Assembly (NCBI RefSeq): GCF_963676685.1
Contig: NC_092354.1
Location: forward strand, 28,768,001 to 28,832,000
Origin: Mytilus edulis
Lineage: Eukaryota
DNA length: 64,000 nt
Direction: 5' to 3'
Each line of letters starts with the position of its first letter. Within the stretch, counting starts at the first letter, position 1. This document shows positions 6,101 to 61,442 of this stretch, piece after piece. The notes under the pieces were generated by a model. That model was not told the DNA's origin, did not search any database, and was given only the letters and a program-made list of their open reading frames with translations. Both the position numbers and the translations under genes were made by a program.

Positions 6101-7310
6101 TATTTGTTTCAAAGTAGCTTATTTCAGTTTAAACTTCATAACTTAACCTCGTATTGAATCATGAGCAGAACTCGCACAATACTACACAAATTTTATAAAA
6201 ACTCCCCAATTTCTTAAAAACTATTGATATAAACATTAAAGAATATATTTTCTTGAGTAATTGCAAATAAGTTAATTTAGATTGCTTAAATTACCCCCGG
6301 TAGAGATTATTATCTATATGTTATTGCAAGTTCTTTCCTTTTAGATTGCATTTGAAACATAAATGAACTGAAAAGTGTACTTGAATGAAAAAAGAAAGAT
6401 TTCTGAAATTTGTACATCTTTTTATTTTTCTTAAATTTATTATAAAAAGCATTTTCTTTTTTTGAGTTTATAAGTGCAATTTACATGTAAACAACTATTG
6501 ACCTAGTTCACTGTACAAGTTAAATTCAGATTTTTGTTTTATTCTACAGTTTAACATACATTTTTGCCCCCTCCCACAATTGGTATGATGATTAACCTTT
6601 AAGTTAAGAATATGTAAAGGATAGAAAAAAATGGTCATTAATGGCATCAATATGTAATATTGAAAAAGAGTTATGCTCCTGGCTTTTAATTAAAAAACTA
6701 AATAAAACCTAAACATTCCTAAAGCCAATTAAGGAATGAAAAGAAAACATAAATTCATGCAGGTAACATAAACAGACATTCATGTAATAACATCATTCCT
6801 CTTCAGTTAATCATAATAATAATATTAATCATTTTAAAGTACTGAAAGTTTATTTCTTTATTTTCTCATGCTGTTTGCTAAATATTCTTGTAATGAAATT
6901 TTGCCTGTCATTTACTTGTTATAAATCCTAAACTATAATCTTGTAAATTGTTATAGAAATGTTCTAAAAAAGTAGAATAAATTCTTATTTATTAATATAC
7001 ATGTATTCTCTTTGTTTAGTCACCAATTTAGAATGATCTCCCTTTTCCATAGGATTGTTTGGATATTTATGATAAATTGCATTTTAATGACATGATAAAT
7101 GTGATGTCTTTGTATAATCTGTGAAACAAATTAATAAAATAAAATAAAAAAGAAGTTGAACACCATGCAAAGAAATATATTACTCAACAGAATAATACAT
7201 ACATGCACATTTTTTGTAAATATACATGCAAATGAAAGTTTTGTTTTAGTTGCATATATTACATGTAATTGGTCTATCTTCCACATACAATATTTGTTAT
7301 GTATTTCTAA

Positions 7311-10400: not shown

Positions 10401-11150
10401 TTGCAGAAAAGTTCTGGAAACGGACATTGTCGATGTGTCAAGATTGACCCACCTAGCTCCAAGAGATTCCTCTGGAGTGGAAGCAAGGACTCATTGGTGT
10501 TGGTGTTGCACTTTGTGGCTGAACATATTGAGTTGGAGATATCCTGTGAGTGTACTGCAAGTTGGACGGACCAGCCAGAGAAGACATAGACGGACCAACC
10601 GGAGAAGACCTTGATGGACCAGCCAGAGGAGATTGATTGATTGATTGTTTGTTGCTTAACGTCCAGTGGCAAATATTTCATGCATATTCAGGACGAGAAC
10701 AAGTTCACAATAAATACTATAGGAGTATATTGGATAGGAACAGAAATTTTGCCTTGCAACAGGCCACCTACGGACCCCTCAAAGAGTTGTTGCAAGGGTT
10801 CTTGACGTGCAAAGAGCGTGGCACTCTCTTTACACGAGGCATCGGATTTAACGTCCCCAGTCTGACCGGACGTGACGGCGAACTTGATACATCCCGCACA
10901 GCCAAACGGACGTCCCACTTTGGCTAGCGTTTTACTGCCGGTCGGAAGAAGACCAAGTGACCATATTTCTATACCCCAGTCACCCTTAGGGGTGCCAGAG
11001 GAGACATATTATGTGCAGGTGTTGATGTTAGCTGATTATTTCTTATTTGCTGAGTATGGACTTCAGGAGCAGATATTTGAGGATCTGGAAGTTCCATTGA
11101 ATCACTATCTGAACTTGAAGATGTCTCTAAAGTTGGTACAAATAGAATAA
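10401..11150 (+). pseudogene. Degraded ORF with TDQPEKT repeats, split by a SINE-like insertion
   Basis: Removing 10633-10993 plus one TSD joins ...MDQPEE to TYYVQVLMLADYFLFAEYG... An internal stop lies within the 24-bp repeats. Confidence 0.4.
10633..10993 (-). mobile_element. SINE-like retroposon (MetaSINE-like core, (CAAT)n tail)
   Basis: 11-bp TSD gccagaggaga (10622-10632, 10994-11004), simple-repeat tail and core gcacgt(t/c)aagaaccc. Related copies or fragments lie at 13725, 18640, 34840-35535, 44246-44520, 52627 and 58927. Confidence 0.75.
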
Positions 11151-29979: not shown

Positions 29980-30985
29980 GTTCTTCCAGATTTTATTAAA
30001 AATCTCAAGATCTTTTGTTAAAGCTTATAAAAAAAACTTTATATCTAATGAGAACTGTTCCAGCAAAACATACATGGGACAGGAGGGGGCTAATCAAATG
30101 AAAAGATACATGATATTAATTGTTGGTTAGTGGAACAGGCATCTATTGACCGTTTCTGGACTTCCAAACATTAGATTGAAAACATGGTAAATGTAATGAA
30201 AATCGACTATACTTTAACATACTTCTAAACAAAGATAAATAGCAATTAATAATAACAAATGGAAGTTTTTAACGACTTACGCTATATATAAACGAATGTA
30301 GGACAGAAAGTCACAGGACAATAAGTCACAATTCATTTTTTCGGACTATTTTCTTTGAATAAAAAACGCTTATTTTTACAAAAATATTTTTGCATTTCTC
30401 TTGAACTATTGTCTAAATTCTAACTTTGTAAACAAAATTTAACAATAAAAGGTCAAAGTAAATCACGTAATTGTTAAAAAAAACAAAATGTCAAAGTGGC
30501 TTTTTTGCATCCCTCCCACAGTCAGTTGCAATTAATTTCGAGATTGACACAGGCTGTATTGTAATGTTACTAAGAATGATTTTGTCGTTGTAGGTATCTA
30601 CCCTAACTTTTCTTTAGGAACCCGTATTTTCCGACACAACTTCAATAAATTCCTTTTTAATTACAGTTTAGTTCACTACATTCCACAAATTTGTGAGGTT
30701 TTCCCAACCATGTATTTATCGATATTGAGATAACGGAATCGCTTTAATTAATGTGACTTCGCACTAGTCACTTACCATCGAACGTTCATACACAAAGTGA
30801 CTACATTATTTTTATTTACCTGAAATTCAATACGTTGCAGGAAAAGGGAGAATCTGTACAAACTTCAAATATTATGATATCGTTTTTGCTGCAGATGCAT
30901 TAATTAATTGTCTTTTCATATGGTCAAATAGATGAAGTGAAGCGACGGATCAAAATTACAAATCAACTTCAATTATATGTATTTA
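29980..30985 (+). repeat. Diverged paralog of the sequence flanking the MULE tandem
   Basis: 29985-30205 aligns by eye to 47700-47935, and 30565-30985 aligns to 60995-61430. Confidence 0.75.
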
Positions 30986-31769
30986 TAGATTTAGTACCAG
31001 ATAGTTACAACGACAAAAATATTTTCAAGTTACCTGTGTGACAAATTAACATATGAATCGGATTTCCGACTAGAGTTGTCTTCACCACGAATACCATTGG
31101 GATAGAACAATTAGAGAATATTCGAGCAACCGTGTGTTTAATTTACTCAAATAATGTTGGAAACGTGTTCAGTAGTCCACCTAACTACATCTACACACTT
31201 TCTTAACTTCAATATGTTGAAGGTTACAAGAAGGCACATACTAGGGACATACTAGGGGAAACAAATTATAATCTCAAAATATATCCAATAATTTCCAAAA
31301 TCATTATTTTGATTTTTTTAGTATTATATAGATAACAACGTGATTTGATTGTGGTTTTGCACCATATATTTGTATATGATTGGGTTATGGTTATAGTTCG
31401 TAGTAGGGCAGACTAATTTTTATACTGACACAAAGATATACCATAATAGAAGTAATCTATATTTAACAATCGTAGAAATTTAACATTATACGAAAGAAAG
31501 ACCTTAGTTATTAAGTTTTATTTTTTTCCGGTCTAGAAATATTTGATACGGGACGCGAAGCAACCAAAATCAATCACGCGATTTTGTTAAATTAATCACA
31601 TGTGGTTTTCCTTTTGAATATTTCAACTTGTACTAATCTACAATATTAGTTAAACATAAACTTATCTATAAGCACTGCACCGTTTTGCAGATGTTCTCGT
31701 CAACTATGTTAATTAAACAATGTTCTTTCTATTTTCTGCGAGGAGAGTTCTAAGTAGTTACCGTAGATG

Positions 31770-34454: not shown

Positions 34455-35982
34455 AAACAGCTGCGCCATGAGCGCATGATACGCCCGACGTTTGTGTGGA
34501 AGTTTTATGCAATAATCATAAATAGTTTCTGAGAAAGTTTTAAGCAATTACCATTTATTGCTTTTGAGACACGGCGGGACATGTGAAACCCCCCCCCCCC
34601 CCCCCCCACCCTGTTTTTTTTTTTTTACAAATATCACTAAATCATAAATTGTTTTTGCGATACGGCGCGACATGTAAAAAAAAAATCTCCCCTTTTTTAC
34701 AAAATACTCAATAACTCAAAAATAAAATTGTGAGTCATCACCAAAAAGTATACAGATCTTAAGATTAATATAACAAAGAAGTGTGTAAAGTTTTAAGCAA
34801 TAATCATAAATCGTTTTTGAGATACGGCACGACATGTATCTTTTGCTCTTTGCACGTTAAGAACCCTTGCAACAACTCTTTGAGGGGTCCGTAGGTGGCC
34901 TGTTGCAAGGCAAAATTTTGGTCCCTATCCAATATATCCTCATTTTCTAGTGGCAGTCCAAATTTCCCCGACCATCATCCCAGATGGCCTTTATTGTATC
35001 AACCTACCTTCTGTATTTATTGTGAACTTGTTTTCGTCCTGAACATCCCCAAGGGTGACTGGGGTATAGAAGTATGGTCACTTGGTCTTCTCCCGACCGG
35101 CAGTAAAACGCTTGCCAAAGTGGGGCGTCCGTTTGGCTGTGCGGGATGTATCAAGTTCGCAGTCACGTCCGGTCAGAAGGGGGACGTTAAATCCGATGCC
35201 TCGTGTAAAGAGAGTGCCACGCTCTTTGCACGTTAAGAACCCTTGCAACAACTGTCCCTATATACCCTATTGCCACGCTCTTTGCACGTTAAGAACCCTT
35301 GCAACAACTGTCCCTATATACCCTCTTTTTCCGGTGGCAGTCCAAATTTCTCCGACCATCATCCCAAATGGCCTCTATTGTATCAACCTACCTATTGTAT
35401 TTATTGTGAACTTGTTCTCGTCCTGAATATGCATGAAATATTTGCCACTGGACGTTAAGCAACCAACAATCAATCGTCCTGAATATGCATGAAATATTTG
35501 CCACTGGACGTTAAGCAACCAACAATCAATCAATCAATAAATCATTTTTGAGATACGGCGCAACATGTAAAAAACCCTCCCCCTTTTTTACAAAATACTC
35601 AATAACTTAAAAATGAAATTTTGAATCATCACCAAAAAGTATACAGATATTAAGATTAATATAACTAAGAAGTGTTTACAGTTTTAAGCAATAATCAAGA
35701 ATCGTTTTTGAGATACGGTGCGACATGTGAAAAAAAAAATCACACCCCTGTTTTAGTGACAAAGTGCCGTAACTCAAAAAGTTTAAATCTTATTTTCACC
35801 AAAAAGTATACAGATCATTTGACCATCATAAAAAACAACTATATTAAGTTTCATGAAATTTAGATTAGTCGTTCTCAAGTTACGGTGCGACATGTTTACG
35901 CCGGACAGACAGACGGACGGACGGACACCGGACATTTGTATACCATAATACGTCCCGTCAAAATTTTGACGGGCGTATAAAA
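34455..35982 (-). mobile_element. HINE-like element with internal tandem units and a nested, rearranged SINE
   Basis: subTIR atacgcccg/cgggcgtat, palindrome cccgtcaaaattttgacggg, (gaca/gacg)n microsatellite and repeated ttttgagatacggcgcgacatgt units. Confidence 0.75.
34840..35535 (+). mobile_element. Compound MetaSINE-like insertion with internal duplications
   Basis: A partial copy is followed by a longer copy starting cccaagggtgactgggg. The gcacgttaagaacccttgc block and the 3' tail are duplicated. Confidence 0.7.
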
Positions 35983-44184: not shown

Positions 44185-44245
44185 GTTAAACAAAAGACAT
44201 AGTGATATTGACATTTGATATGTACAATTTATTATATACAACTAT

Positions 44246-44520
44246 GATTGATTGTTGGTTGCTTAACGTCCAGTGGCAAATATTTCATGCATATTCAGGA
44301 CGAGAACAAATTCACAATAAATACAATAGGTAGGTTGATACAATAGAGGCCTTCTGGGATGATGGTCTGGGAAATTTGGACTGCCACTGGAAAATGAGGG
44401 TATATTGGATAGGGACATCAATTTTGCCTTGCAACAGGCCACCTACGGACCCTCAAAAAGTTGTTGCAAGGGTTCTTAATGTGCAAAAAGCGTGGCACTC
44501 TCTTAACACGAGGCATCGGA
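44246..44520 (-). mobile_element. 5'-truncated MetaSINE-like copy
   Basis: Same family as 10633-10993. Confidence 0.7.
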
Positions 44521-47992: not shown

Positions 47993-48566
47993 TAAATAGT
48001 AAACACACAAAAATTCTGAATTACGAGGACATTTCAAAAAGGAAAGTCCCAAATCAAATGGCAAAATCAATAGTTCAAACACATCAAACGAATGGATAAC
48101 AACTGTCATATTCCTGACTTGGTACAGGCATTTTCTTGTGTAGAAATGGTGGATTGAACCTGGTTTTATAGCTAGCTAAACCTCTCACTTGTATGACAGT
48201 CGCATCAAATTCCATTACATTGTCAACGATGTGTGAACAAAACAAACAGACACAATAAGTAAAAATGTTGAAAACAGGGGTACATCAGTCAACATTGTGT
48301 TATCATCTTAATCACTATAAAAAAAAATGTAACGAAGAAGCACAAAAAAGGCAGACATCAAATTTAACATCCTCATTTTGCTTATATTATACGATTATAT
48401 TTATCTATGTAAAATCTACCCACGAAGAATGGAAGAATTTCAGTACTGGTGTAAATGAGCGCATTGGAAATTCGCACAGGTAGATATAAAATAATTTTGT
48501 CGTTCAAAGTATGACGCATACATAAATGCAGAGTCACGTAAAGCGTAAAGTAGATATAACAAAAAT
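47993..48566 (+). repeat. Dispersed repeat abutting the truncated end of MULE copy 1
   Basis: Matches 42030-42240 (aaaagtcccaaatcaa...cacatcaaacgaatggataacaactgtcatattcctgacttggtacaggc). Confidence 0.7.
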
Positions 48567-51500
48567 ACAGAACTAATTTTAACTCACATGTATGTGGAAA
48601 TTACTGGTAGGGTAGGATGCCTAACTTATAGAATAGAAAAATAGAAAATATTTTTTTTATTCACCAAATAAGGGCCCCTAGAAGGGCATATAGCATACAA
48701 ACAATAACATATGCAATACACAGACAATAGATATTTAATATGAGTAATAAAATAATACTACAGGAAACACTAAACAAAATAATAGCAATATACTAGTACT
48801 ATTATAATTCAATTAATACTAGTGTTGACATTGACTTATGTGCTGCAGGTTTATTAGTGTATTTTACCTATAAAAAGAAAAACAAGAAGTATAAGTAGGT
48901 AGTACTGAGAAATATTTACACATATAAATACATTAAATTACACACAGTTTGTTTTTTTAATAAATTTACTGCACGCGTTGCCGTTTTAGCGTAGTTGTCC
49001 TATCAGCCAGTTTCCTTTTCCTCTGACCTTTCTTCTTTCCTTTCGACCTAGCTTCATTGACCACTCGTCTGCCATCTGTTGACTTAACCAATTTGGTCTT
49101 CATACGGTATCGGCGGAACCTGGCAAAATATTTGTACCTTTCCATTAAAGTTTTGTTTGCCCAAACATGCCTGTCAATCTTAAAATGTTCGTGTGTGCTC
49201 GCAAGCGTATAAGGTCCTCTCCCGATCACTGCTCTCCGTAAATCTTTATAGTTTGCCTCTACCATGTCTGTCATCTTTATCACAAAGTCAACTAATGACT
49301 GAGGCTTCCAATCAACAGCTATCTTCAGAACATGATTGTACGATTCACTATTATTGTTAGTCCACTCTCTTTCAATTCTTCCCGCATTTTGTGGCTCATA
49401 TATTTTCCCTTTAAGGACTGGCTTCAAAACCGTTGAAAAGTAGCCTTTCAATGATGGAAATTTCTCCTTGCAGAATTCTTCGACTTCTTCACACTTTTCT
49501 TCAAAAACGGCACTATCGTCTGCATTAGATATGCCATTTCTTCCAAAAATGCGTTGCTCGATATCTAATCTCTCCTTTCTGTGCATCCCAACTCCATTTT
49601 TCATCTTTTCTGAAAGGTTTAGTTTCAAATGCCGTGTACATAATACATGAGTTGCTTCTGGAAAACTTTTGACAATGGCTTTAACTAAAGATCCTTCTTG
49701 ATCGGAACCAATGACCAATTCCGAGGTGTCCACATCCGCGAGTTTGGTCTTAAGATGCGAGAAAAATATACTATACGTATCAAAATGCGAACAGTCGTGT
49801 AAAAACATGGGTCCGACAAATAAAGGCGGTTCTCCTGTTTCAATCTTTGTGACAGAAAGTTGTTTGAAAACAGATGGTGTCACATGAATGTCACAAATGT
49901 TAAATGTTTTGTCGAAACCCAAAAGAGTTTGTCCACTGCAGCACAAGTTCACAACGTCCTTCATCATTTCTTCCGTATACAGGATAACGCACGGTGTTTT
50001 ACCTGGAGAATGAGCCACATGCTTAATTAAACTGTGTCCTTTCTGCATCATATTTTCTATAGTTTGTATGTTATCTGCCATATTTCCACGGTTTCCTGTT
50101 ACGCCAGTTATATTCCGAATTTCTTTCTTCTTATCGCGGTATTTTTTGTCACGAATCTGTCTTGGTGCCGAAGGCCCGGTTGCTTCATCACTACAGTTGA
50201 TTAACAATTTATTATATGCATTTTTTGGACGCATGGTTTTCACAAGTTCTCCCATTTCTTCAAATAACAGTGCTGGAGTTCGAACGAATTCACTTCCTTT
50301 CTTTGAATTGCCATGAGCAGAAAAACCGGGGTGTTTGCCTTTATATTCCACGACAGCCGCATTGAAGTTGATATCAAATGAAGGAGGTGCTTTTCCGACC
50401 CATGTTACTCTTTTCTTGTATGACTGTTGCTTAAGAGTGGAGTAGCTACGACTGATTTCCACGATTTTTTCATCGGCGGGCTGAGGATCCACTGGAATGA
50501 ATTCTTTCTTCTTGTTTATTTGCTTTTCAGTACAAAATATACCCTGTCTACATACAACAGCTTTTAGCTTACCATCATCTTGAACAACATATGTCTTAGG
50601 TGTTGACCCAGATGAACTAATCCAGACCCCACAGTCATCGGAAAATTCACTACGTAAGTTATTAACTCGTCTTGCAATGTTTCTGGAGTTGTCAATTGTA
50701 AAACATACGTTGTCTTTCTTTCCTTCTGGGATACCATGTCTAACATCTTTTGATTTCAGTTTATTTAAAAGTTCCTCTAAATTTAAAAACTCTCCGTATC
50801 TTAATTGTTCTTCTGGTTGAAACATACAAGAATTTGATACTTCATCGAGAGAATCGTCTTTTTCGGCGTCATCTGAACTGTCATTGTCTTCATTCTCCAG
50901 GTTTTCTTTTGCCTCATCTGACCCATTGCTCCTTTGGTTATGAAAGAAACTAAAATTGTCTGACAAAACTGATTGATCAAGGGAACTGTTGTGCGTATTG
51001 CTACTGCTTTCATCTGGATCACTTTCACCAAATATATCCGTAACAGTTCTTTCTGCAGATTCACCAGTTTCGTCTGCAGTCTTTGGTTTTATGCTGTAAA
51101 AAAAATACATGTCTTAATAGAATAAGAAAAGAATGAACCAACGCGCCATATGGTATCATAAAACACAGATGACACATCACGAACAAGTATACTACTAGTA
51201 TTTAAAATTGAACAATATATATTCACTTGATGAACAACTAAATAGCTAGAAATTGTATTTTATTATGGTGTAAAAGCGGCATCACCCTTAAACGGTAAAG
51301 GTAACGCCACATAAATCAAAGGCTGTTTTATGTGGTAATGAGTATTGAATACATAAATTTCATAACACGGACGTACAAACCGACAAGGGTAAAAAATAAT
51401 GGCCCTTTCGCTACGGGGAGCCATACAAACGAATCTTATAATTCTTTATTTTTTATAATGCAACCTTGAAATTACTAGTTATCACAAATTAAATCGTGTT

Positions 51501-54500
51501 ACTATGTGCATGCAGTGTGTGACGTTGTCGTGAGAAGCAAGATCATGTGATGTAATGAATGTTGAAATTTACTGAGTGATACCCTTTGATATTGCAATGT
51601 CATTTTTTACATTGAATAAGTATTTATATCATACCTTTCATTGTTGTATGTAGCATCAGTACTGTCGACAGTATCACTGTGTTTGTTGTGCTGTTGGCTG
51701 CTGTTGTCTCTGTTGTGGGGGTCTATGCTTGTCTCGTAGTCTTGGTTAGTGCCTTCTTTGTTGCATTTGTTGTTTTTTGCATTTCTTTGGTTGCTTGTAT
51801 GGTCCTGATCACTACTGTCGTCCAGATCCACGAACTGTGAAGTCGGTGTATGTAATCTCAAAAGAGGTACACAGTGGTTTGGATCAAACACTGCGAATGG
51901 TTGTGGTCTTACTTTCATAGTCCACATTATTGTTACTGCAGCCTCTTCACTTTCATTAACAGTTCTCCCAACTATTTTTCTGTGATATGGCTCTGTATGG
52001 TAGTTTGAAGATACCAAAGGTGGATAATATGATTGAAGTGGCTTGTTTATAACAGCACTCAACCCATACATATGTTGCATGTCGGAATATGCTCCTATGA
52101 CTATGGCATTCCTGACAAGCTGTTCATATGGACTGGTTACTACACGGTTATCCCTAATCCTGTCGGTGTACCCTTTAGATGAGGTATCGTATTGCTGTTT
52201 ATTGCTTATGATTTCCAATGCAGTCAGGAGTCTGAGGTGATGATGGTAAATTTGCGTTCCAAAAAGTCCAGTTGATACAGAGCGATAAAGACAGTTGCCG
52301 TCGCCTATAGTTTCTATTGGTGTTCTGGTTTCCAATACCGCTGGCGCAAAACCGCGTAAAATATTTGCAGAGACTTCATCGACATTTTCCAGACAAATTT
52401 GATTGGATTGTTCCGGTAGTTTGATATCGTACGTCTTCAATAAAAGTGATTCAGATGTAGCAGTATTGGTTATTTGTGAGGTGTTTCCATCTTTCAATGT
52501 AGATTCTAACCTGAAATATGCCCAAAAATTAACATCAGCACAAATTAGTATCAATTTTCTCGTCCTTTTTATATATACTTGAACTTGAAAAGTGAGATAA
52601 TTAACGGTCTCGAAATGCGGTAATATGATTGATTGTTGGTTGCTTAACGTCCAGTGGCAAATATTTTTTGCAAATTCAGGACATTTTATACTTGTTTTAT
52701 AATTTATACATATATAATTCATGTAGAACGAAATGCGGTAATATCATTCATTTTCTTCTTTTTTTTTTTTTTTATCAAAAAGACATACCTTCATCAGTGA
52801 CATATTATATGTTTCTGTTAAATGTACATGTATTACCTTATAATATAGCAAGATAAAATTTTCATTGTCGATATACAAGTGAATAAGAAATATTAATTTA
52901 TGACTGTCAAACAATTGTTCTACATGAATTAAATTTTATAAATTATAAAACATGCACTGTTTTGTTCAATCTCGGTCGCTAATTTAATTAGTTGGAACAT
53001 TTCAACAATTCCTTATAAAGTTTTTCGAATGAGTATATATATTATATGCATATCACGTAAAATAGAAAATATCATATAAAACATGAAGGAAATTTAACAG
53101 TAATTATTGAATAAATACTAATAAGTTTGAGTACTTTGTTCTATTTGTTTGCCTTTGTTTGTGTTGTGTGTGTGTGTGAGTGTGTTACATTTTAAATTAA
53201 TACACATTAATTATGACTTTGACACGTTAAACTTGTCTATGGTTTGAAATCGTAAAAAAAAGGTCCCGTTATCTTCATGAACAAGCTTATCTATAATAGA
53301 TACATGTAGCGCAGGCAAATATTTATCACCATCGGACATCGTTTCGCTAATCTACATATATAAGTGGTTTATTAGATAAAATAAATAGAAATCAACAGGC
53401 CATTAATTTTTTCACACCCTTTATCTATACGCTTATTATAAGGTAAACAATTATTAATTATACCGAGAGCGGGTGCGCTTTTCATTTATCTATATTTCCT
53501 ATGAAAGACGAAACGAACAGACTATAAAAAAAATAATAATTGGGACATCTATACTAATTTAGTATCATAATCCGATATAATAATGATGTCATTTCTTTTT
53601 ATTAAAAAATCTTCTTTTATTCCCATGTAGCCCTTTGTTTTTACGAATTAAGAAATTGAAACTAAACAAGAATCTCGTAAAGTTTGGCAAGTTTAACATG
53701 TAGCAGGACTTGAAATTTTCGTCCAATATTTTTATAATTCTATTTTCTAAATATTTACCTTAACAAGGACTGCTGGCAGTCAAAACTTTCCTGATCAAAA
53801 CAGCAAAATTTGCAGTAAAATTTCAGTCCTCTCGTTGCCCATTGTTTTGTTAATTCTGATGACATTCCTTTGCCGACACAGCCACTGTGCACCCATTTTC
53901 CACACCCAAAGCAGAGGACGGATTCTGTGCATTCACAATCCTTACTACAGATACAGCAAGGGTACTGTTTTCGATATCGAGATTTACAACTACGTGCTCT
54001 CACCATTTTTTGTAATTTTGAAAAAAAGTGAGGAAACAAGCCTTTTTATTTTTTTTAAAGTGACGATTATCGTGTTTAAATCACGTGCAACAAATATTTT
54101 TGACATCTAACATCCGAGAGGAAATGGTGATGCTGACATGTATATTTTTTATATTACCATACCCAATGCCACCGGGCAATATGTTGACATCTTAATAATA
54201 AACAAACGAAATATTTTTTATTAAATGTAAGGATAAACATTTATAGTAAGATAATATTTGCTTTTCATTTATTTTTACTGCGTATTAGTATAAACATTTA
54301 AAATGCTGTCCTAATTTATGAACCTGATGTTCAGTGCATTGTTGTCGTTGATGTGATTAAAATCCTTGATGAAAAAATAAATAATTAAGCATACATGTAT
54401 TAAACAAAATTTAACTAGAAAAACATGTTAAATTGTTTCTTCTTTGTAAATTCACATATTCTTATAAATGCACAATCTAAATTTTTAATTATGCATTTAA

Positions 54501-54688
54501 TTTTATTATTACGAAGAATTGTTAACAATATAAAAAAAATATAATACATTGTTTTAACTTTATTCAATAAATATATATGTATCCTCTTTTCGGTTCTTTT
54601 CGGTCCTTTTCGGTTCTTTTTGGTCCTTTTCGGTTCTTTTCGGTTCTTTTCTGTAATTCGTCGCTCTTTTCTGTAAATCGTTGGACCG
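48567..54688 (-). mobile_element. Mutator-like (MULE) DNA transposon, copy 1, lacking its left TIR
   Basis: Near-identical to 54866-60986. Right TIR 54580-54688 is present; the first 172 bp of the element are absent. Confidence 0.9.
48966..54006 (-). CDS. PHD-OTU-MULE transposase fusion, 1083 aa (exons 54006-53759, 52510-51635, 51093-48966)
   Basis: Both GT-AG introns are phase 2 and in frame (248+876+2128=3252 nt). C4HC3 PHD; OTU GDGNCLYRS...PNHCVPL; MULE FDKTFN, GSDQE, CTRH and TNNNSESYN. Confidence 0.88.
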
Positions 54689-54800
54689 AAATAGGGTTCG
54701 ACGACTTACAGAAAAGAGCGACGATTTACAGAAAAGAACCGAAAAGGACCGAAAAGGACCAAAAAGAACCGAAAAGGACCGAAAAGAACCGAAAAGGATA
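54580..54800. repeat. Abutting terminal inverted repeats (~107 bp each) built of 10-bp subrepeats
   Basis: (cggt(t/c)ctttt)n...ctgtaaatcgttggaccg AAATA gggttcgacgacttacag...(aaaag(a/g)accg)n. Confidence 0.9.
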
Positions 54801-57800
54801 TCGATTTTTTTGTTATAGAAGGAAATAAGGAAATTGCATTTAATCATTGAAAACCTTATACTGTGACAGAACTAATTTTAACTCACATGTATGTGGAAAT
54901 TACTGGTAGGGTAGGATGCCTAACTTATAGAATAGAAAAATAGAAAATATTTTTTTTATTCACCAAATAAGGGCCCCTAGAAGGGCATATAGCATACAAA
55001 CAATAACATATGCAATACACAGACAATAGATATTTAATATGAGTAATAAAATAATACTACAGGAAACACTAAACAAAATAATAGCAATATACTAGTACTA
55101 TTATAATTCAATTAATACTAGTGTTGACATTGACTTATGTGCTGCAGGTTTATTAGTGTATTTTACCTATAAAAAGAAAAACAAGAAGTATAAGTAGGTA
55201 GTACTGAGAAATATTTACACATATAAATACATTAAATTACACACAGTTTGTTTTTTTAATAAATTTACTGCACGCGTTGCCGTTTTAGCGTAGTTGTCCT
55301 ATCAGCCAGTTTCCTTTTCCTCTGACCTTTCTTCTTTCCTTTCGACCTAGCTTCATTGACCACTCGTCTGCCATCTGTTGACTTAACCAATTTGGTCTTC
55401 ATACGGTATCGGCGGAACCTGGCAAAATATTTGTACCTTTCCATTAAAGTTTTGTTTGCCCAAACATGCCTGTCAATCTTAAAATGTTCGTGTGTGCTCG
55501 CAAGCGTATAAGGTCCTCTCCCGATCACTGCTCTCCGTAAATCTTTATAGTTTGCCTCTACCATGTCTGTCATCTTTATCACAAAGTCAACTAATGACTG
55601 AGGCTTCCAATCAACAGCTATCTTCAGAACATGATTGTACGATTCACTATTATTGTTAGTCCACTCTCTTTCAATTCTTCCCGCATTTTGTGGCTCATAT
55701 ATTTTCCCTTTAAGGACTGGCTTCAAAACCGTTGAAAAGTAGCCTTTCAATGATGGAAATTTCTCCTTGCAGAATTCTTCGACTTCTTCACACTTTTCTT
55801 CAAAAACGGCACTATCGTCTGCATTAGATATGCCATTTCTTCCAAAAATGCGTTGCTCGATATCTAATCTCTCCTTTCTGTGCATCCCAACTCCATTTTT
55901 CATCTTTTCTGAAAGGTTTAGTTTCAAATGCCGTGTACATAATACATGAGTTGCTTCTGGAAAACTTTTGACAATGGCTTTAACTAAAGATCCTTCTTGA
56001 TCGGAACCAATGACCAATTCCGAGGTGTCCACATCCGCGAGTTTGGTCTTAAGATGCGAGAAAAATATACTATACGTATCAAAATGCGAACAGTCGTGTA
56101 AAAACATGGGTCCGACAAATAAAGGCGGTTCTCCTGTTTCAATCTTTGTGACAGAAAGTTGTTTGAAAACAGATGGTGTCACATGAATGTCACAAATGTT
56201 AAATGTTTTGTCGAAACCCAAAAGAGTTTGTCCACTGCAGCACAAGTTCACAACGTCCTTCATCATTTCTTCCGTATACAGGATAACGCACGGTGTTTTA
56301 CCTGGAGAATGAGCCACATGCTTAATTAAACTGTGTCCTTTCTGCATCATATTTTCTATAGTTTGTATGTTATCTGCCATATTTCCACGGTTTCCTGTTA
56401 CGCCAGTTATATTCCGAATTTCTTTCTTCTTATCGCGGTATTTTTTGTCACGAATCTGTCTTGGTGCCGAAGGCCCGGTTGCTTCATCACTACAGTTGAT
56501 TAACAATTTATTATATGCATTTTTTGGACGCATGGTTTTCACAAGTTCTCCCATTTCTTCAAATAACAGTGCTGGAGTTCGAACGAATTCACTTCCTTTC
56601 TTTGAATTGCCATGAGCAGAAAAACCGGGGTGTTTGCCTTTATATTCCACGACAGCCGCATTGAAGTTGATATCAAATGAAGGAGGTGCTTTTCCGACCC
56701 ATGTTACTCTTTTCTTGTATGACTGTTGCTTAAGAGTGGAGTAGCTACGACTGATTTCCACGATTTTTTCATCGGCGGGCTGAGGATCCACTGGAATGAA
56801 TTCTTTCTTCTTGTTTATTTGCTTTTCAGTACAAAATATACCCTGTCTACATACAACAGCTTTTAGCTTACCATCATCTTGAACAACATATGTCTTAGGT
56901 GTTGACCCAGATGAACTAATCCAGACCCCACAGTCATCGGAAAATTCACTACGTAAGTTATTAACTCGTCTTGCAATGTTTCTGGAGTTGTCAATTGTAA
57001 AACATACGTTGTCTTTCTTTCCTTCTGGGATACCATGTCTAACATCTTTTGATTTCAGTTTATTTAAAAGTTCCTCTAAATTTAAAAACTCTCCGTATCT
57101 TAATTGTTCTTCTGGTTGAAACATACAAGAATTTGATACTTCATCGAGAGAATCGTCTTTTTCGGCGTCATCTGAACTGTCATTGTCTTCATTCTCCAGG
57201 TTTTCTTTTGCCTCATCTGACCCATTGCTCCTTTGGTTATGAAAGAAACTAAAATTGTCTGACAAAACTGATTGATCAAGGGAACTGTTGTGCGTATTGC
57301 TACTGCTTTCATCTGGATCACTTTCACCAAATATATCCGTAACAGTTCTTTCTGCAGATTCACCAGTTTCGTCTGCAGTCTTTGGTTTTATGCTGTAAAA
57401 AAAATACATGTCTTAATAGAATAAGAAAAGAATGAACCAACGCGCCATATGGTATCATAAAACACAGATGACACATCACGAACAAGTATACTACTAGTAT
57501 TTAAAATTGAACAATATATATTCACTTGATGAACAACTAAATAGCTAGAAATTGTATTTTATTATGGTGTAAAAGCGGCATCACCCTTAAACGGTAAAGG
57601 TAACGCCACATAAATCAAAGGCTGTTTTATGTGGTAATGAGTATTGAATACATAAATTTCATAACACGGACGTACAAACCGACAAGGGTAAAAAATTAAT
57701 GGCCCTTTCGCTACGGGGAGCCATACAAACGAATCTTATAATTCTTTATTTTTTATAATGCAACCTTGAAATTACTAGTTATCACAAATTAAATCGTGTT

Positions 57801-60800
57801 ACTATGTGCATGCAGTGTGTGACGTTGTCGTGAGAAGCAAGATCATGTGATGTAATGAATGTTGAAATTTACTGAGTGATACCCTTTGATATTGCAATGT
57901 CATTTTTTACATTGAATAAGTATTTATATCATACCTTTCATTGTTGTATGTAGCATCAGTACTGTCGACAGTATCACTGTGTTTGTTGTGCTGTTGGCTG
58001 CTGTTGTCTCTGTTGTGGGGGTCTATGCTTGTCTCGTAGTCTTGGTTAGTGCCTTCTTTGTTGCATTTGTTGTTTTTTGCATTTCTTTGGTTGCTTGTAT
58101 GGTCCTGATCACTACTGTCGTCCAGATCCACGAACTGTGAAGTCGGTGTATGTAATCTCAAAAGAGGTACACAGTGGTTTGGATCAAACACTGCGAATGG
58201 TTGTGGTCTTACTTTCATAGTCCACATTATTGTTACTGCAGCCTCTTCACTTTCATTAACAGTTCTCCCAACTATTTTTCTGTGATATGGCTCTGTATGG
58301 TAGTTTGAAGATACCAAAGGTGGATAATATGATTGAAGTGGCTTGTTTATAACAGCACTCAACCCATACATATGTTGCATGTCGGAATATGCTCCTATGA
58401 CTATGGCATTCCTGACAAGCTGTTCATATGGACTGGTTACTACACGGTTATCCCTAATCCTGTCGGTGTACCCTTTAGATGAGGTATCGTATTGCTGTTT
58501 ATTGCTTATGATTTCCAATGCAGTCAGGAGTCTGAGGTGATGATGGTAAATTTGCGTTCCAAAAAGTCCAGTTGATACAGAGCGATAAAGACAGTTGCCG
58601 TCGCCTATAGTTTCTATTGGTGTTCTGGTTTCCAATACCGCTGGCGCAAAACCGCGTAAAATATTTGCAGAGACTTCATCGACATTTTCCAGACAAATTT
58701 GATTGGATTGTTCCGGTAGTTTGATATCGTACGTCTTCAATAAAAGTGATTCAGATGTAGCAGTATTGGTTATTTGTGAGGTGTTTCCATCTTTCAATGT
58801 AGATTCTAACCTGAAATATGCCCAAAAATTAACATCAGCACAAATTAGTATCAATTTTCTCGTCCTTTTTATATATACTTGAACTTGAAAAGTGAGATAA
58901 TTAACGGTCTCGAAATGCGGTAATATGATTGATTGTTGGTTGCTTAACGTCCAGTGGCAAATATTTTTTGCAAATTCAGGACATTTTATACTTGTTTTAT
59001 AATTTATACATATATAATTCATGTAGAACGAAATGCGGTAATATCATTCATTTTCTTCTTTTTTTTTTTTTTTATCAAAAAGACATACCTTCATCAGTGA
59101 CATATTATATGTTTCTGTTAAATGTACATGTATTACCTTATAATATAGCAAGATAAAATTTTCATTGTCGATATACAAGTGAATAAGAAATATTAATTTA
59201 TGACTGTCAAACAATTGTTCTACATGAATTAAATTTTATAAATTATAAAACATGCACTGTTTTGTTCAATCTCGGTCGCTAATTTAATTAGTTGGAACAT
59301 TTCAACAATTCCTTATAAAGTTTTTCGAATGAGTATATATATTATATGCATATCACGTAAAATAGAAAATATCATATAAAACATGAAGGAAATTTAACAG
59401 TAATTATTGAATAAATACTAATAAGTTTGAGTACTTTGTTCTATTTGTTTGCCTTTGTTTGTGTTGTGTGTGTGTGAGTGTGTTACATTTTAAATTAATA
59501 CACATTAATTATGACTTTGACACGTTAAACTTGTCTATGGTTTGAAATCGTAAAAAAAAGGTCCCGTTATCTTCATGAACAAGCTTATCTATAATAGATA
59601 CATGTAGCGCAGGCAAATATTTATCACCATCGGACATCGTTTCGCTAATCTACATATATAAGTGGTTTATTAGATAAAATAAATAGAAATCAACAGGCCA
59701 TTAATTTTTTCACACCCTTTATCTATACGCTTATTATAAGGTAAACAATTATTAATTATACCGAGAGCGGGTGCGCTTTTCATTTATCTATATTTCCTAT
59801 GAAAGACGAAACGAACAGACTATAAAAAAAATAATAATTGGGACATCTATACTAATTTAGTATCATAATCCGATATAATAATGATGTCATTTCTTTTTAT
59901 TAAAAAATCTTCTTTTATTCCCATGTAGCCCTTTGTTTTTACGAATTAAGAAATTGAAACTAAACAAGAATCTCGTAAAGTTTGGCAAGTTTAACATGTA
60001 GCAGGACTTGAAATTTTCGTCCAATATTTTTATAATTCTATTTTCTAAATATTTACCTTAACAAGGACTGCTGGCAGTCAAAACTTTCCTGATCAAAACA
60101 GCAAAATTTGCAGTAAAATTTCAGTCCTCTCGTTGCCCATTGTTTTGTTAATTCTGATGACATTCCTTTGCCGACACAGCCACTGTGCACCCATTTTCCA
60201 CACCCAAAGCAGAGGACGGATTCTGTGCATTCACAATCCTTACTACAGATACAGCAAGGGTACTGTTTTCGATATCGAGATTTACAACTACGTGCTCTCA
60301 CCATTTTTTGTAATTTTGAAAAAAAGTGAGGAAACAAGCCTTTTTATTTTTTTTAAAGTGACGATTATCGTGTTTAAATCACGTGCAACAAATATTTTTG
60401 ACATCTAACATCCGAGAGGAAATGGTGATGCTGACATGTATATTTTTTATATTACCATACCCAATGCCACCGGGCAATATGTTGACATCTTAATAATAAA
60501 CAAACGAAATATTTTTTATTAAATGTAAGGATAAACATTTATAGTAAGATAATATTTGCTTTTCATTTATTTTTACTGCGTATTAGTATAAACATTTAAA
60601 ATGCTGTCCTAATTTATGAACCTGATGTTCAGTGCATTGTTGTCGTTGATGTGATTAAAATCCTTGATGAAAAAATAAATAATTAAGCATACATGTATTA
60701 AACAAAATTTAACTAGAAAAACATGTTAAATTGTTTCTTCTTTGTAAATTCACATATTCTTATAAATGCACAATCTAAATTTTTAATTATGCATTTAATT

Positions 60801-60986
60801 TTATTATTACGAAGAATTGTTAACAATATAAAAAAAATATAATACATTGTTTTAACTTTATTCAATAAATATATATGTATCCTCTTTTCGGTTCTTTTCG
60901 GTCCTTTTCGGTTCTTTTTGGTCCTTTTCGGTTCTTTTCGGTTCTTTTCTGTAATTCGTCGCTCTTTTCTGTAAATCGTTGGACCG
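54694..60986 (-). mobile_element. Mutator-like (MULE) DNA transposon, copy 2, full length (6293 bp), putatively autonomous
   Basis: Both TIRs present (54694-54800, 60878-60986), flanked by AAATA on each side, with an intact spliced transposase gene. Confidence 0.92.
55265..60304 (-). CDS. PHD-OTU-MULE transposase fusion, 1083 aa (exons 60304-60057, 58810-57935, 57392-55265)
   Basis: Same ORF translations and splice sites as copy 1. Confidence 0.88.
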
Positions 60987-61442
60987 AAATAAAGTCACTA
61001 AAAATGATTTTGTCGTTAAATGTATCTAACCTATCTTATCTTGAAGGAACCGTATCTTCCCACACAAATTAAATTCCTTTAAGTTACAGTTTAGTTCACT
61101 ATATTTCAGAAATTTGTGAGGTTTTTCCCAACCAGGCATTTATCGATATTGAGATAACGGAATCGTTAAAATTTAATGTCTCCTATTCGCTCTAGTCACA
61201 TACCATCTAACGTTCATACGCAAAGTGACTAAATTATTTTTATTTATCTGAAATACAATACGTTCACGGTCGCAGGAAAAGGGAGAATATGTATAAACTT
61301 TTAATATTTTAAATACTTTGATAGCGATTGTTGCTGCCGATGAACTGTTTAGTCTTCTTTCTATATGGTCAACTATTTGAAGTGAAGCGACGGCAGAAAA
61401 TTACAATTCAACTTCAATTATGTATTTATTTATAAGCATTAA

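What the first reader, a model, noticed from the sequence alone, without database searches (positions are those of the whole stretch)
48966..60304. Intact Mutator-like transposase fused to a PHD reader and an OTU/vertnin-like protease
Seen: three separate ORFs in the track (94, 371 and 714 aa) join through two canonical phase-2 introns into one uninterrupted 1083-aa frame. It has a C4HC3 PHD finger, an OTU-like module with the Cys (GDGNCLY) and His (PNHCVPL) motifs intact, and a complete MULE D-D-CxxH-E core. Established: PHD fingers often read histone H3 tails, OTU domains are deubiquitinase-fold proteases, and some MULEs carry Ulp1 proteases. Inference: this is a transposase with built-in chromatin reading and ubiquitin editing, which could serve target selection or counter-silencing. 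It may resemble the mobile source of vertnin-like genes.
Basis: partly seen in the sequence, partly recalled or inferred. Interest (0 to 1): 0.9.

Follow-up and report, generated by a model that had tools for sequence, protein, structure and literature searches.

The report
Intact mussel Mutator transposon with PHD-OTU
This is an intact, probably still mobile Mutator-like DNA transposon of the blue mussel. Its transposase carries a histone-reader finger and a deubiquitinase-type protease at its front end, a layout shared by related elements in several marine invertebrate phyla, so it is a good specimen of a partly known kind, not a new kind of system.

Summary
On the minus strand, three ORFs join through two GT-AG, phase-2 introns into an open 1083-codon frame. 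It encodes a C4HC3 PHD finger, an OTU protease (Pfam above threshold; the AF2 model matches only OTU deubiquitinases) and a MULE transposase (D394, D464, C485/H488, E583; best fold match the IS256-family ISCth4 transposase).

- The span holds two copies with identical coding sequence: a full 6.3-kb element (54694-60986) with 102-bp TIRs, and a partial copy lacking one TIR.
- The genome holds many deleted derivatives with the same termini and 9-bp (sometimes 8-bp) target-site duplications.
- A GCM/WRKY-like DNA-binding domain precedes the catalytic core.

PHD-OTU-MULE in this order recurs in continuous proteins of Lingula, Branchiostoma and Ciona and in sister families of this genome (Mytilus edulis). 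The OTU Cys and His are kept in about 98% of roughly 150-175 homologues. It is therefore an old, selected architecture, not a one-off capture.

No RNA junction read was found, so splicing rests on homology. What the PHD and OTU do is untested.

OTU-bearing MuDR (MuDR-6_HM, Medicago) and PHD-bearing MULE/Rehavkus/Ginger elements are already published, so novelty is modest. The vertnin link could not be tested.

The parts
54694..60986 (-). Full-length element (copy 2, 'E2'), about 6.29 kb, with both terminal inverted repeats
   Evidence: Inverted repeat 54695-54796 / 60884-60985, 102 nt, 95% complementary. More than 20 deleted copies elsewhere in the genome start and end at exactly these termini.
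48567..54688 (-). Partial element (copy 1, 'E1'). It lacks the 172 bp that carry the TIR on the 3' side of the gene, but its gene is complete.
   Evidence: 99.95% identical to 54866-60991, with 0 substitutions and 2 intronic indels. CDS identical to copy 2. The truncated end abuts the end of a high-copy repeat.
60884..60986 (.). TIR of E2 on the 5' side of the gene, with 6.7 copies of a 10-bp subterminal repeat (CCGAAAAGRA). Inferred transposase-binding sites.
   Evidence: (13 exact motifs in the window, all inside the three TIRs; 0.23 expected by chance).
54694..54796 (.). TIR of E2 on the 3' side of the gene
54586..54688 (.). TIR of E1 on the 5' side of the gene. Only AAATA (54689-54693) separates it from the E2 terminus.
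53759..54006 (-). Exon 1 of copy 1, from the ATG at 54006. PHD finger C4HC3 at 53803-53958. Copy 2 equivalent: 60057-60304.
   Evidence: Pfam PHD E 4.3e-5, 23.9 bits against a cut-off of 24. C4HC3 pattern and residues verified. Nearest solved sequences are PHD fingers of ARID4, Pygopus, DIDO1 and CFP1.
52511..53758 (-). Intron 1 (1248 nt, GT..AG, phase 2). It holds a fragment of a high-copy repeat at 52624-52682.
51635..52510 (-). Exon 2 of copy 1. OTU protease domain at about 51835-52509 (Asp70 52300-52302, Cys73 52291-52293, His212 51874-51876), followed by a disordered tail. Copy 2 equivalent: 57935-58810.
   Evidence: Pfam OTU 27 bits, above the 23.3 cut-off. OTUD1 is the best PDB sequence hit. 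AF2 model pLDDT 84.8, and all top Foldseek hits are OTU deubiquitinases. Catalytic residues conserved.
51094..51634 (-). Intron 2 (541 nt, GT..AG, phase 2). It lies in the disordered linker and is absent from sister families.
   Evidence: The M. coruscus gene model P0014 joins exon 2 to exon 3 at exactly this point. The sister ORF L034:1420-3618 is continuous across this position.
48966..51093 (-). Exon 3 of copy 1, including the stop codon: acidic disordered linker, DNA-binding domain, DDE catalytic domain, basic C-terminal tail. Copy 2 equivalent: 55265-57392.
50283..50795 (-). GCM/WRKY-like beta-rich domain (exon-3 residues about 100-270; H260 nearly invariant). Inferred DNA-binding domain for the TIR.
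   Evidence: VIA-align hit to the GCM domain 1odh_A, Z 7.0, 101 residues, model range 101-315. The nearest Atlas clusters carry GCM, FLYWCH or ALS2CR8. Conservation.
49098..50045 (-). MULE DDE catalytic domain (exon-3 residues about 350-665): D394 49911-49913, D464 49701-49703, C485 49638-49640, H488 49629-49631, E583 49344-49346
   Evidence: Pfam MULE 27.2 bits against 27.6, and Transposase_mut. Foldseek and VIA best hit is the ISCth4 (IS256-family) transposase, E 1.3e-5, Z 12.5. Catalytic residues kept in 65/66 to 75/75 homologues.
48969..49055 (-). Basic C-terminal tail (KGKKKGQRKRK...KRQR). Inferred nuclear localisation signal.
   Evidence: Read directly from the translation. The GKKxGQxKRKR motif is conserved in the family consensus.

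Best explanation
The feature is an autonomous Mutator-like (MULE/MuDR superfamily) cut-and-paste DNA transposon of Mytilus edulis. It is present as a full 6.3-kb element (E2) next to a partial copy (E1) with the same gene.

Its three-exon gene encodes one 1083-aa protein with these parts, in order:
- an N-terminal PHD finger;
- an OTU cysteine protease;
- an acidic disordered linker;
- a GCM/WRKY-type DNA-binding domain;
- an IS256/Mutator-type DDE catalytic domain with the CxxH motif;
- a basic tail.

Shown here:
- the element boundaries, the 102-bp TIRs with 10-bp subterminal repeats, and 9-bp (sometimes 8-bp) target-site duplications in derivative copies;
- intact catalytic residues in both enzymes;
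- conservation of the PHD-OTU-MULE order in diverged relatives from molluscs, a brachiopod, amphioxus and Ciona.

Inferred mechanism:
- The DNA-binding domain recognises the subterminal repeats.
- The DDE domain excises and reinserts the element.
- The PHD finger tethers the transposase to chromatin through a histone H3 tail, possibly a methyl-lysine state.
- The OTU domain is an active isopeptidase.

I rank the possible OTU roles roughly as follows:
- about 40%: it removes ubiquitin or a ubiquitin-like modifier from host chromatin or repair factors at the donor or target site;
- about 25%: it protects the transposase itself from ubiquitin-dependent degradation;
- about 20%: it cleaves the protein in the linker.
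None of these was tested.
For: Structure of the element:
- TIRs.
- Termini shared by more than 20 internally deleted copies, and 9-bp (some 8-bp) TSDs in 13 copies where both ends were read.
- The 10-bp motif occurs only in the TIRs.

Domains:
- Pfam PHD, OTU and MULE.
- OTU fold and IS256/hAT-like transposase fold.
- GCM-like DNA-binding domain.

One protein:
- Open spliced frame.
- Homology to relatives starts at the first residue of exon 2, and gene model P0014 uses the exon 2-exon 3 junction.
- 12 fetched proteins carry PHD+OTU+MULE and 61 carry OTU+MULE, always in this order.
- They include Lingula XP_013388573.1, Branchiostoma XP_035685260.1 and Ciona XP_078489297.1.
- A sister ORF on C7 has OTU and MULE in one 733-aa frame.
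- PHD exons lie 2.6-7 kb upstream of OTU-MULE ORFs in three sister families.

Selection on the residues:
- OTU: Asp 175/176, Cys 172/176, His 151/154.
- MULE: D 74/74, D 74/75, C and H 75/75, E 65/66.

Recent activity:
- The two copies have identical CDS.
- A 100%-identical copy is fused to CHID1 in gene models from another M. edulis assembly, whereas CHID1 lies on another chromosome here.
- Contigs about 99.9% identical occur in other individuals' runs.
Against: - No spliced read or contig was found. The two RNA-seq runs gave only a handful of reads on exons 2 and 3. The contigs that cross the splice sites are unspliced and are probably DNA.
- Pfam scores for PHD (23.9 against 24) and MULE (27.2 against 27.6) fall just under the curated cut-offs.
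- Every other copy of this particular family found in the genome is deleted or carries stops and is 5-12% diverged. Transposition of this master copy is therefore not shown within this genome.
- E2 has no matching 9-bp duplication of its own (ACCGAAATA on one side, AAATAAAGT on the other), so the tandem pair did not arise by a simple insertion.
- Gene model P0017 skips exon 2, so an isoform without the OTU domain is possible.
Confidence: 0.85

Rival explanations
1. The three ORFs are not one protein. The transposase is translated on its own from ATG 51110 (the 714-aa ORF), and the PHD and OTU ORFs are separate products, or are joined differently, for example PHD spliced directly to the transposase with exon 2 skipped.
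For: No junction reads were found. The 714-aa ORF has its own ATG 17 nt upstream of the acceptor. Both introns are phase 2, so skipping exon 2 keeps the frame, and the M. edulis gene model P0017 does exactly that.
Against: Homologues carry PHD, OTU and MULE in one continuous chain. The ORF sequence upstream of each acceptor has no homology, whereas homology starts at exon-2 residue 1. P0014 uses the exon 2-exon 3 junction. An alternative isoform may coexist with the full-length one.
Confidence: 0.1
2. The PHD and OTU parts are passively captured host gene fragments, as in Pack-MULEs, with no role for the element.
For: MULEs are known for capturing host fragments (PMC6431247). PHD and OTU are ordinary host domains.
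Against: The same order of domains is kept down to 25-45% identity across phyla. The OTU catalytic residues are kept in about 98% of homologues and the eight zinc ligands of the PHD are kept. Captured fragments decay.
Confidence: 0.03
3. It is a domesticated host gene derived from a transposase, no longer a mobile element.
For: The ORF is intact and the CDS is identical in the two copies. Related proteins are annotated as ordinary 'uncharacterized protein LOC...' genes.
Against: The gene sits between 102-bp TIRs. Many deleted derivatives share those termini and carry TSDs. All DDE residues are intact. The location differs between assemblies.
Confidence: 0.02
4. The second copy is an assembly artefact (a falsely duplicated 6.3-kb block), so only one element exists at this locus.
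For: There are zero substitutions between the copies, and the only differences are two small indels of a kind that long-read errors produce.
Against: The junction is specific: TIR, then AAATA, then the inverted TIR plus 172 bp that are present only once. Both states of the 53165 indel occur in another sample. A sister family on C8 shows the same full-plus-partial direct arrangement.
Confidence: 0.12

Closest known systems
MuDR-6_HM (Hydra magnipapillata MULE, group 14 of Dupeyron et al. 2019, PMC6446971) and the neighbouring mollusc groups MULE-Cg and MULE-Mollusca
   Same: It is a MULE transposase listed with an 'Ovarian Tumour Gene' (OTU) motif in a marine or freshwater invertebrate. The mollusc MULE groups lie next to it in that phylogeny.
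   Different: The paper gives no domain order and no PHD finger, and TSDs are 'not indicated'. I could not obtain the Repbase sequence, so I do not know whether it is the same clade or the same architecture.
Medicago MULE transposases with an OTU-superfamily protease, and Ciona/C. elegans MULEs with a PHD finger (Babu et al. 2006, PMC1702500)
   Same: A MULE core with a WRKY-GCM1-type DNA-binding domain, plus an OTU or a PHD accessory domain.
   Different: In those proteins the OTU or the PHD is C-terminal and they occur singly. Here both are N-terminal and together, in the order PHD, OTU, DNA-binding domain, DDE.
Rehavkus elements (Repbase; PMC6446971)
   Same: [quoted passage not shown]
   Different: Rehavkus is described with a minisatellite before the 3' TIR, and no OTU is listed for it. 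This element has no such minisatellite, and its PHD is N-terminal next to an OTU domain. A 43%-identical sister family on C8 does carry an 88-bp minisatellite.
Ginger1 transposons and animal Helitrons/Helentrons with OTU, and Ulp1-bearing MULEs (Bao et al. 2010, PMC2836005; PMC6431247)
   Same: DNA transposons whose main protein carries an OTU or Ulp1 cysteine protease, sometimes with a PHD finger. The same open question applies: what the protease does for transposition.
   Different: Those have a different transposase superfamily (integrase-like, or Rep/helicase) or a different protease (Ulp1), and the protease is C-terminal in Ginger1.
Vertnin (VRTN), a vertebrate inactive OTU-like protein (PMC10318531)
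   Same: It contains an OTU-like papain-fold domain. Relatives of this element exist in non-vertebrate chordates.
   Different: Vertnin is reported to lack the catalytic residues, while this OTU has them.

Membership tests
MULE / MuDR (Mutator) superfamily of DNA transposons | DDE catalytic triad with a C/DxxH motif between the second D and the E | tested here: met
   D394, D464, C485xxH488 and E583 are present. They are kept in 65/66 to 75/75 homologues. Pfam MULE 27.2 bits (cut-off 27.6) and Transposase_mut E 4.8e-4.
MULE / MuDR (Mutator) superfamily of DNA transposons | Fold of the IS256/Mutator-type transposase (RNase H-like core with an all-alpha insertion) | tested here: met
   AF2 model pLDDT 82. 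Best Foldseek hit is ISCth4, E 1.3e-5. Best VIA hit is ISCth4, Z 12.5 over residues 348-635.
MULE / MuDR (Mutator) superfamily of DNA transposons | Target-site duplication of about 9 bp (8-11) | tested here: met
   13 deleted copies with both ends read: most have 9-bp TSDs and some 8-bp, next to the termini G|GGTTCGACGA...TCGTTGGACC|G. The window's own E2 has no matching TSD.
MULE / MuDR (Mutator) superfamily of DNA transposons | Long terminal inverted repeats | tested here: met
   102-nt arms, 95% complementary.
MULE / MuDR (Mutator) superfamily of DNA transposons | N-terminal WRKY-GCM1/FLYWCH-type DNA-binding domain | tested here: inconclusive
   GCM domain 1odh_A, Z 7.0 (a middling score), covering model residues 101-315. 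Atlas feature neighbours carry GCM, FLYWCH or ALS2CR8. No Pfam hit. The domain was not folded on its own.
OTU cysteine proteases (Pfam PF02338; deubiquitinase fold) | Profile match above the curated threshold | tested here: met
   27.0 bits against a cut-off of 23.3. The best PDB sequence hit is OTUD1, E 0.0035, across the catalytic Cys loop.
OTU cysteine proteases (Pfam PF02338; deubiquitinase fold) | OTU fold | tested here: met
   Model pLDDT 84.8, above 90 for residues 1-225. The top 50 Foldseek hits are all OTU domains: OTUD3, VCPIP1, DUBA, OTUD1, Cezanne, A20, OTUB1 and viral OTUs. Probability 1.00, TM up to 0.75 on the target.
OTU cysteine proteases (Pfam PF02338; deubiquitinase fold) | Catalytic Asp/Cys/His present | tested here: met
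   D70, C73 and H212. Kept in 175/176, 172/176 and 151/154 homologues.
OTU cysteine proteases (Pfam PF02338; deubiquitinase fold) | Isopeptidase activity on ubiquitin or a ubiquitin-like modifier | not testable with these tools
   Needs an enzyme assay.
PHD finger | C4HC3 zinc-ligand pattern and profile match | tested here: inconclusive
   The full C4HC3 pattern is present. The four ligand positions I checked, C17, C20, C65 and C68, are kept in all covering homologues, and eleven homologues match the whole C4HC3 pattern. The Pfam score is 23.9 bits, 0.1 bit under the cut-off.
PHD finger | Binding of a histone H3 tail | not testable with these tools
   There is only weak sequence similarity to solved PHD fingers (ARID4, Pygopus, DIDO1, CFP1; E 0.003-0.5). 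From my own knowledge, most of these read methylated H3K4.
Rehavkus | Minisatellite before the 3' TIR; PHD finger in the transposase; no OTU described | tested here: not met
   No minisatellite apart from the 10-bp repeats inside the TIRs. The PHD is N-terminal and is followed by an OTU domain.
Pack-MULE (non-autonomous MULE with captured host fragments) | No transposase; decaying host fragments between the TIRs | tested here: not met
   An intact transposase is present, and the accessory domains are conserved across phyla.
Vertnin family | Sequence or profile similarity to VRTN | not testable with these tools
   No VRTN sequence or profile was reachable. Pfam, PDB, Atlas and protein searches returned no vertnin, but these blanks carry no weight.

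The most novel reading that the evidence does not exclude
The element is a currently active master copy of an undescribed, bilaterian-wide MULE clade in which an N-terminal PHD-OTU module is required for transposition. On this reading the PHD steers the transposase to a particular histone mark, and the OTU removes ubiquitin from chromatin or repair factors there. The vertebrate inactive OTU-like gene vertnin would descend from such an element in an early chordate.
Probability: 0.12. Interest if true: 0.7.

Novelty: new variant of a known kind. Interest (0 to 1): 0.4.

Why it matters
What the OTU and Ulp1 proteases carried by several DNA-transposon superfamilies do has been an open question since at least 2006-2010 (PMC1702500, PMC2836005). 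This locus offers a complete, apparently undamaged element for bench tests:
- defined TIRs;
- short natural non-autonomous partners of about 660 bp;
- both enzymes with their catalytic residues intact.

It also shows that PHD-OTU-MULE is a conserved architecture in molluscs, brachiopods, amphioxus and tunicates, not an accident of one genome. For mussel genomics, it flags a likely source of insertion polymorphism and of mis-annotated fusion gene models such as 'CHID1'.

Tried and rejected
- **RNA support.** One search for runs and one laying of reads gave no joints. The two runs guessed to be RNA look like DNA, because their contigs run through the splice sites. The two true RNA runs gave only scattered reads. 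The result is inconclusive.
- **Vertnin.** Literature gives only 'inactive OTU-like' (PMC10318531) and an IS3-like HTH motif (PMC3024977). No vertnin appeared in any search, and length filters and missing references make that blank meaningless.
- **PF27108.** This family is precomputed for the Lingula homologue but is not in the local Pfam copy, so its identity is unknown.
- **Bacterial promoter and terminator scan.** Irrelevant for a eukaryote.
- **Simple insertion model for the tandem pair.** Rejected, because the 9-mers flanking E2 do not match. I found no model that explains the pair.
- **Earlier findings by place.** Nothing was returned.
- **Joined protein.** The joined 1083-aa protein was never sent to a search or folding tool. 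All searches and folds were done exon by exon, by reference. The join was made only inside scripts, to count stop codons and to compare the two copies.

Full report
**Observation**

The window is G000:C11:28768001-28832000 of a 1.37-Gb, AT-rich animal genome. Protein hits at 93-100% identity name it Mytilus edulis.

On the minus strand, intron 1 runs 53758-52511 and intron 2 runs 51634-51094. Both are GT..AG with pyrimidine-rich 3' ends, and both are phase 2. The joined frame is open for 1083 codons from ATG 54006 to the stop at 48966-48968. Exons are 39-43% GC and introns 27-32%. Only one other ORF of 150 aa or more exists in the first 48.5 kb of the window. All named motifs are present at the stated places.

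Every search used the exons by reference: window:53761-54006:-, window:51637-52509:- and window:48969-51092:-. The join was made only inside scripts, to count stops and to compare the copies.

They are 99.95% identical, with no substitutions. They differ by two indels, both intronic, and have identical CDS.

Copy 2 sits between 102-nt inverted repeats (54695-54796 and 60884-60985, 95% complementary). Each repeat holds 6.6-6.7 tandem copies of a 10-bp unit. The motif CCGAAAAGRA occurs 13 times in the window, always inside a TIR, against 0.23 expected by chance.

A genome-wide DNA search found 175 matching pieces. Many belong to internally deleted derivatives that begin at base 1 and end at base 6291 of the element, for example about 660-bp copies made of bases 1-490 plus 6126-6291. 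These derivatives are 80-95% identical to the window element.

Reading the flanks of 13 copies with both ends shows target-site duplications next to the termini G|GGTTCGACGA...TCGTTGGACC|G. Most are 9 bp and some are 8 bp. That sets the full element at 54694-60986.

Copy 1 lacks the 172 bp that carry the other TIR. Its truncated end abuts the end of an unrelated high-copy repeat. Only AAATA separates the copy 1 terminus from the copy 2 terminus.

**Domains**

- **PHD finger (exon 1).** Pfam PHD, E 4.3e-5, 23.9 bits against a cut-off of 24. The full C4HC3 pattern is present. The nearest solved sequences are PHD fingers of ARID4, Pygopus, DIDO1 and CFP1, with weak E-values of 0.003-0.5.
- **OTU protease (exon 2).** Pfam OTU, 27 bits, above the 23.3 cut-off. 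OTUD1 is the best PDB sequence hit, aligned across the catalytic Cys loop. An AF2 model built on 51 homologues has pLDDT 84.8, above 90 for residues 1-225. Its top Foldseek matches are all OTU deubiquitinases: OTUD3, VCPIP1, DUBA, OTUD1, Cezanne, A20, OTUB1 and viral OTUs.
- **Transposase (exon 3).** Pfam MULE, 27.2 bits against 27.6, and Transposase_mut. The AF2 model has pLDDT 82. Its best match is the IS256-family ISCth4 transposase (Foldseek E 1.3e-5, VIA Z 12.5), followed by Hermes, P element and RAG1. IS256 is the bacterial kin of Mutator.
- **Linker and DNA-binding domain.** Residues 1-90 of exon 3 and the last 65 or so residues of exon 2 are predicted disordered, so intron 2 lies in a linker. 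Residues about 100-270 of exon 3 form a beta-rich domain that aligns to the GCM DNA-binding domain (1odh_A, Z 7.0). Its feature neighbours in the Atlas carry GCM, FLYWCH or ALS2CR8. This fits the WRKY-GCM1 DNA-binding domains described for MULEs (PMC1702500), but the score is middling and the domain was not folded alone.

**Is it one protein?**

No RNA junction was found. The two runs guessed to be RNA gave contigs that run straight through the splice sites, so they are probably DNA. The two real RNA-seq runs gave only a few reads on exons 2 and 3. The large peak at 52627-52813 covers a high-copy repeat fragment (52624-52682) inside intron 1.

The case for one protein therefore rests on comparison:
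- Homology of relatives begins at residue 1 of exon 2, and none exists in the ORF sequence upstream of the acceptor.
- An M. coruscus gene model (P0014) joins exon 2 to exon 3 exactly as proposed.
- Among the proteins fetched, 12 carry PHD+OTU+MULE and 61 carry OTU+MULE. The order is always the same. Spacing between PHD and OTU is similar in the three-domain proteins.
- A 43%-identical sister family in this genome has OTU and MULE in a single 733-aa ORF without stops (L034:1420-3618). Intron 2 is therefore specific to this lineage.
- PHD exons lie 2.6-7 kb upstream of the OTU-MULE ORFs of three sister families.

One gene model from another M. edulis assembly (P0017) skips exon 2. Because both introns are phase 2, a PHD-transposase isoform without the OTU is possible.

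**Distribution and selection**

- At least 12 diverged loci in this genome (25-46% identity) have an OTU directly upstream of a MULE.
- HMMER against 1.84 billion cluster representatives gave 1358 hits to the OTU exon at E up to 0.001, of which 113 were at E up to 1e-30.
- Of the nine longest hits checked, seven score for the MULE domain (four also for OTU) and two others for OTU only. The local phmmer finds OTU before MULE in all but one.
- Named members include Lingula anatina XP_013388573.1 (PHD 12-60, OTU 138-227, MULE 630-731), Branchiostoma floridae XP_035685260.1 and XP_035659254.1, a Branchiostoma hybrid XP_078674699.1, and Ciona intestinalis XP_078489297.1. There are also Mytilus, Pinctada and Plakobranchus proteins. 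All are annotated as uncharacterised.
- Across the fetched homologues, the OTU Asp, Cys and His are kept in 175/176, 172/176 and 151/154. The MULE D, D, C, H and E are kept in 74/74, 74/75, 75/75, 75/75 and 65/66.

This is what selection on both enzymatic activities would produce. It excludes a passive capture of host fragments.

**Age and activity**

Within this genome, only the two window copies carry the OTU exon of this family. All other family members are deleted or stop-ridden and are 5-12% diverged.

Signs of recent life:
- The two copies have identical CDS.
- Contigs about 99.9% identical occur in runs from other samples. They carry an in-frame ATA insertion at 50588.
- Gene models from another M. 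edulis assembly fuse CHID1 exons to exons 1 and 3 of this element at 99.7-100% identity. In this genome CHID1 lies on C4, not C11, and no full element lies downstream of it. This suggests an insertion polymorphism, but it rests on a gene model and was not verified at the DNA level.

**The tandem pair is unexplained**

The 9-mers flanking copy 2 do not match (ACCGAAATA against AAATAAAGT), so a plain insertion next to copy 1 does not fit.

A sister family on C8 shows the same pattern. There, a full element with 273-bp TIRs is followed by a direct partial second copy at 99.7% identity. This argues for a recurrent by-product of transposition or gap repair and against an assembly error.

**Mechanism**

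Shown: the element's ends, its TSDs, its non-autonomous derivatives, and intact and conserved catalytic residues.

Inferred:
- The GCM-like domain binds the 10-bp subterminal repeats.
- The DDE domain cuts and pastes the element.
- The basic tail imports the protein into the nucleus.
- The PHD tethers it to an H3 tail.
- The OTU is an active isopeptidase.

My ranking for the OTU role is:
- about 40%: action on host ubiquitin or ubiquitin-like conjugates at chromatin or repair sites;
- about 25%: self-protection from degradation;
- about 20%: cleavage in the linker, the idea raised for Medicago MULEs in PMC1702500;
- the remainder: other.

None of these is tested.

**Comparison with what is known**

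- DNA transposons with OTU or Ulp1 proteases and PHD fingers are on record. Ginger1 carries OTU, Ulp1 or PHD; animal Helitrons carry OTU; and Mutator elements carry Ulp1 (PMC2836005, PMC6431247).
- MULEs with a C-terminal OTU occur in Medicago, and MULEs with a C-terminal PHD occur in Ciona and C. elegans (PMC1702500).
- Rehavkus has a PHD finger, and the Hydra family MuDR-6_HM is listed with an 'Ovarian Tumour Gene' motif beside two mollusc MULE groups (PMC6446971).
- Bivalve MULEs have been catalogued without domain detail (PMC10294476).
- I found no paper describing the N-terminal PHD-OTU pair on a MULE or its spread across phyla. Repbase and Dfam could not be consulted.

I therefore rate it a new variant of a known kind, at modest interest.

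The vertnin link is untested. Vertnin is reported as an inactive OTU-like protein (PMC10318531), and relatives of this element occur in non-vertebrate chordates. That is all that can be said.

**Limits**

- PF27108, precomputed for the Lingula homologue, is not in the local Pfam copy.

Noticed in passing
window 52624-52682 (and 58924-58982 in copy 2): A fragment of about 59 bp of a very high-copy repeat sits inside intron 1. It also matches window 44243-44301, 35472-35532 and 10638-10694. It collects almost all RNA-seq reads laid on the region (depth about 128 in X21), with loose ends on both sides. That is expression of other copies, not of this gene.
   Followed up: partly
window 48200-48566: A high-copy repeat (3532 first-look candidates, 87-91% identity genome-wide) ends exactly where the truncated copy 1 begins.
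   Followed up: partly
window 60990-61434 and 30562-30987: The right flank of the element belongs to a repeat family found almost only on chromosome C11: 22 of 24 matches outside the window locus, 72-98% identity, mostly between 22 and 34 Mb. One copy lies 30 kb away in the same window.
   Followed up: no
G000:C8:84221000-84240900 (L055+L056): A 43%-identical sister MULE family shows a full element (273-bp TIRs, PHD exon, partial OTU, intact 737-aa transposase ORF, 88-bp minisatellite) directly followed by a partial second copy at 99.7% identity. This is the same full-plus-partial tandem pattern as in the window.
   Followed up: partly
protein P0025 (Mytilus galloprovincialis LOC143071537, 865 aa): It contains three tandem copies of the region homologous to the GCM-like domain of exon 3 (34-40% identity) and no transposase core. 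It also has a weak Pfam CG-1 hit. It may be a host protein built from the transposon's DNA-binding domain.
   Followed up: no
proteins P0017 and P0002 ('CHID1 [Mytilus edulis]', another assembly); G000:C4:66264839-66274020: Public gene models fuse chitinase-domain CHID1 exons to exons of this transposon, which is a mis-annotation. CHID1 lies on C4 in this genome, so the other individual seems to carry a full copy at a different locus.
   Followed up: partly
window 50588: Contigs from two other samples (X1, X2) carry an in-frame ATA insertion after this base in exon 3. Both states of the 53165 TG indel also occur, so near-identical variants of the element circulate in the population.
   Followed up: no
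protein P0210 (858 aa, 35% identity, labelled 'MAG: hypothetical protein [Sedimenticola sp.]'): An OTU-MULE protein of this animal family is filed under a bacterial metagenome-assembled genome. Most likely this is invertebrate host DNA binned with a symbiont or an environmental bacterium.
   Followed up: no
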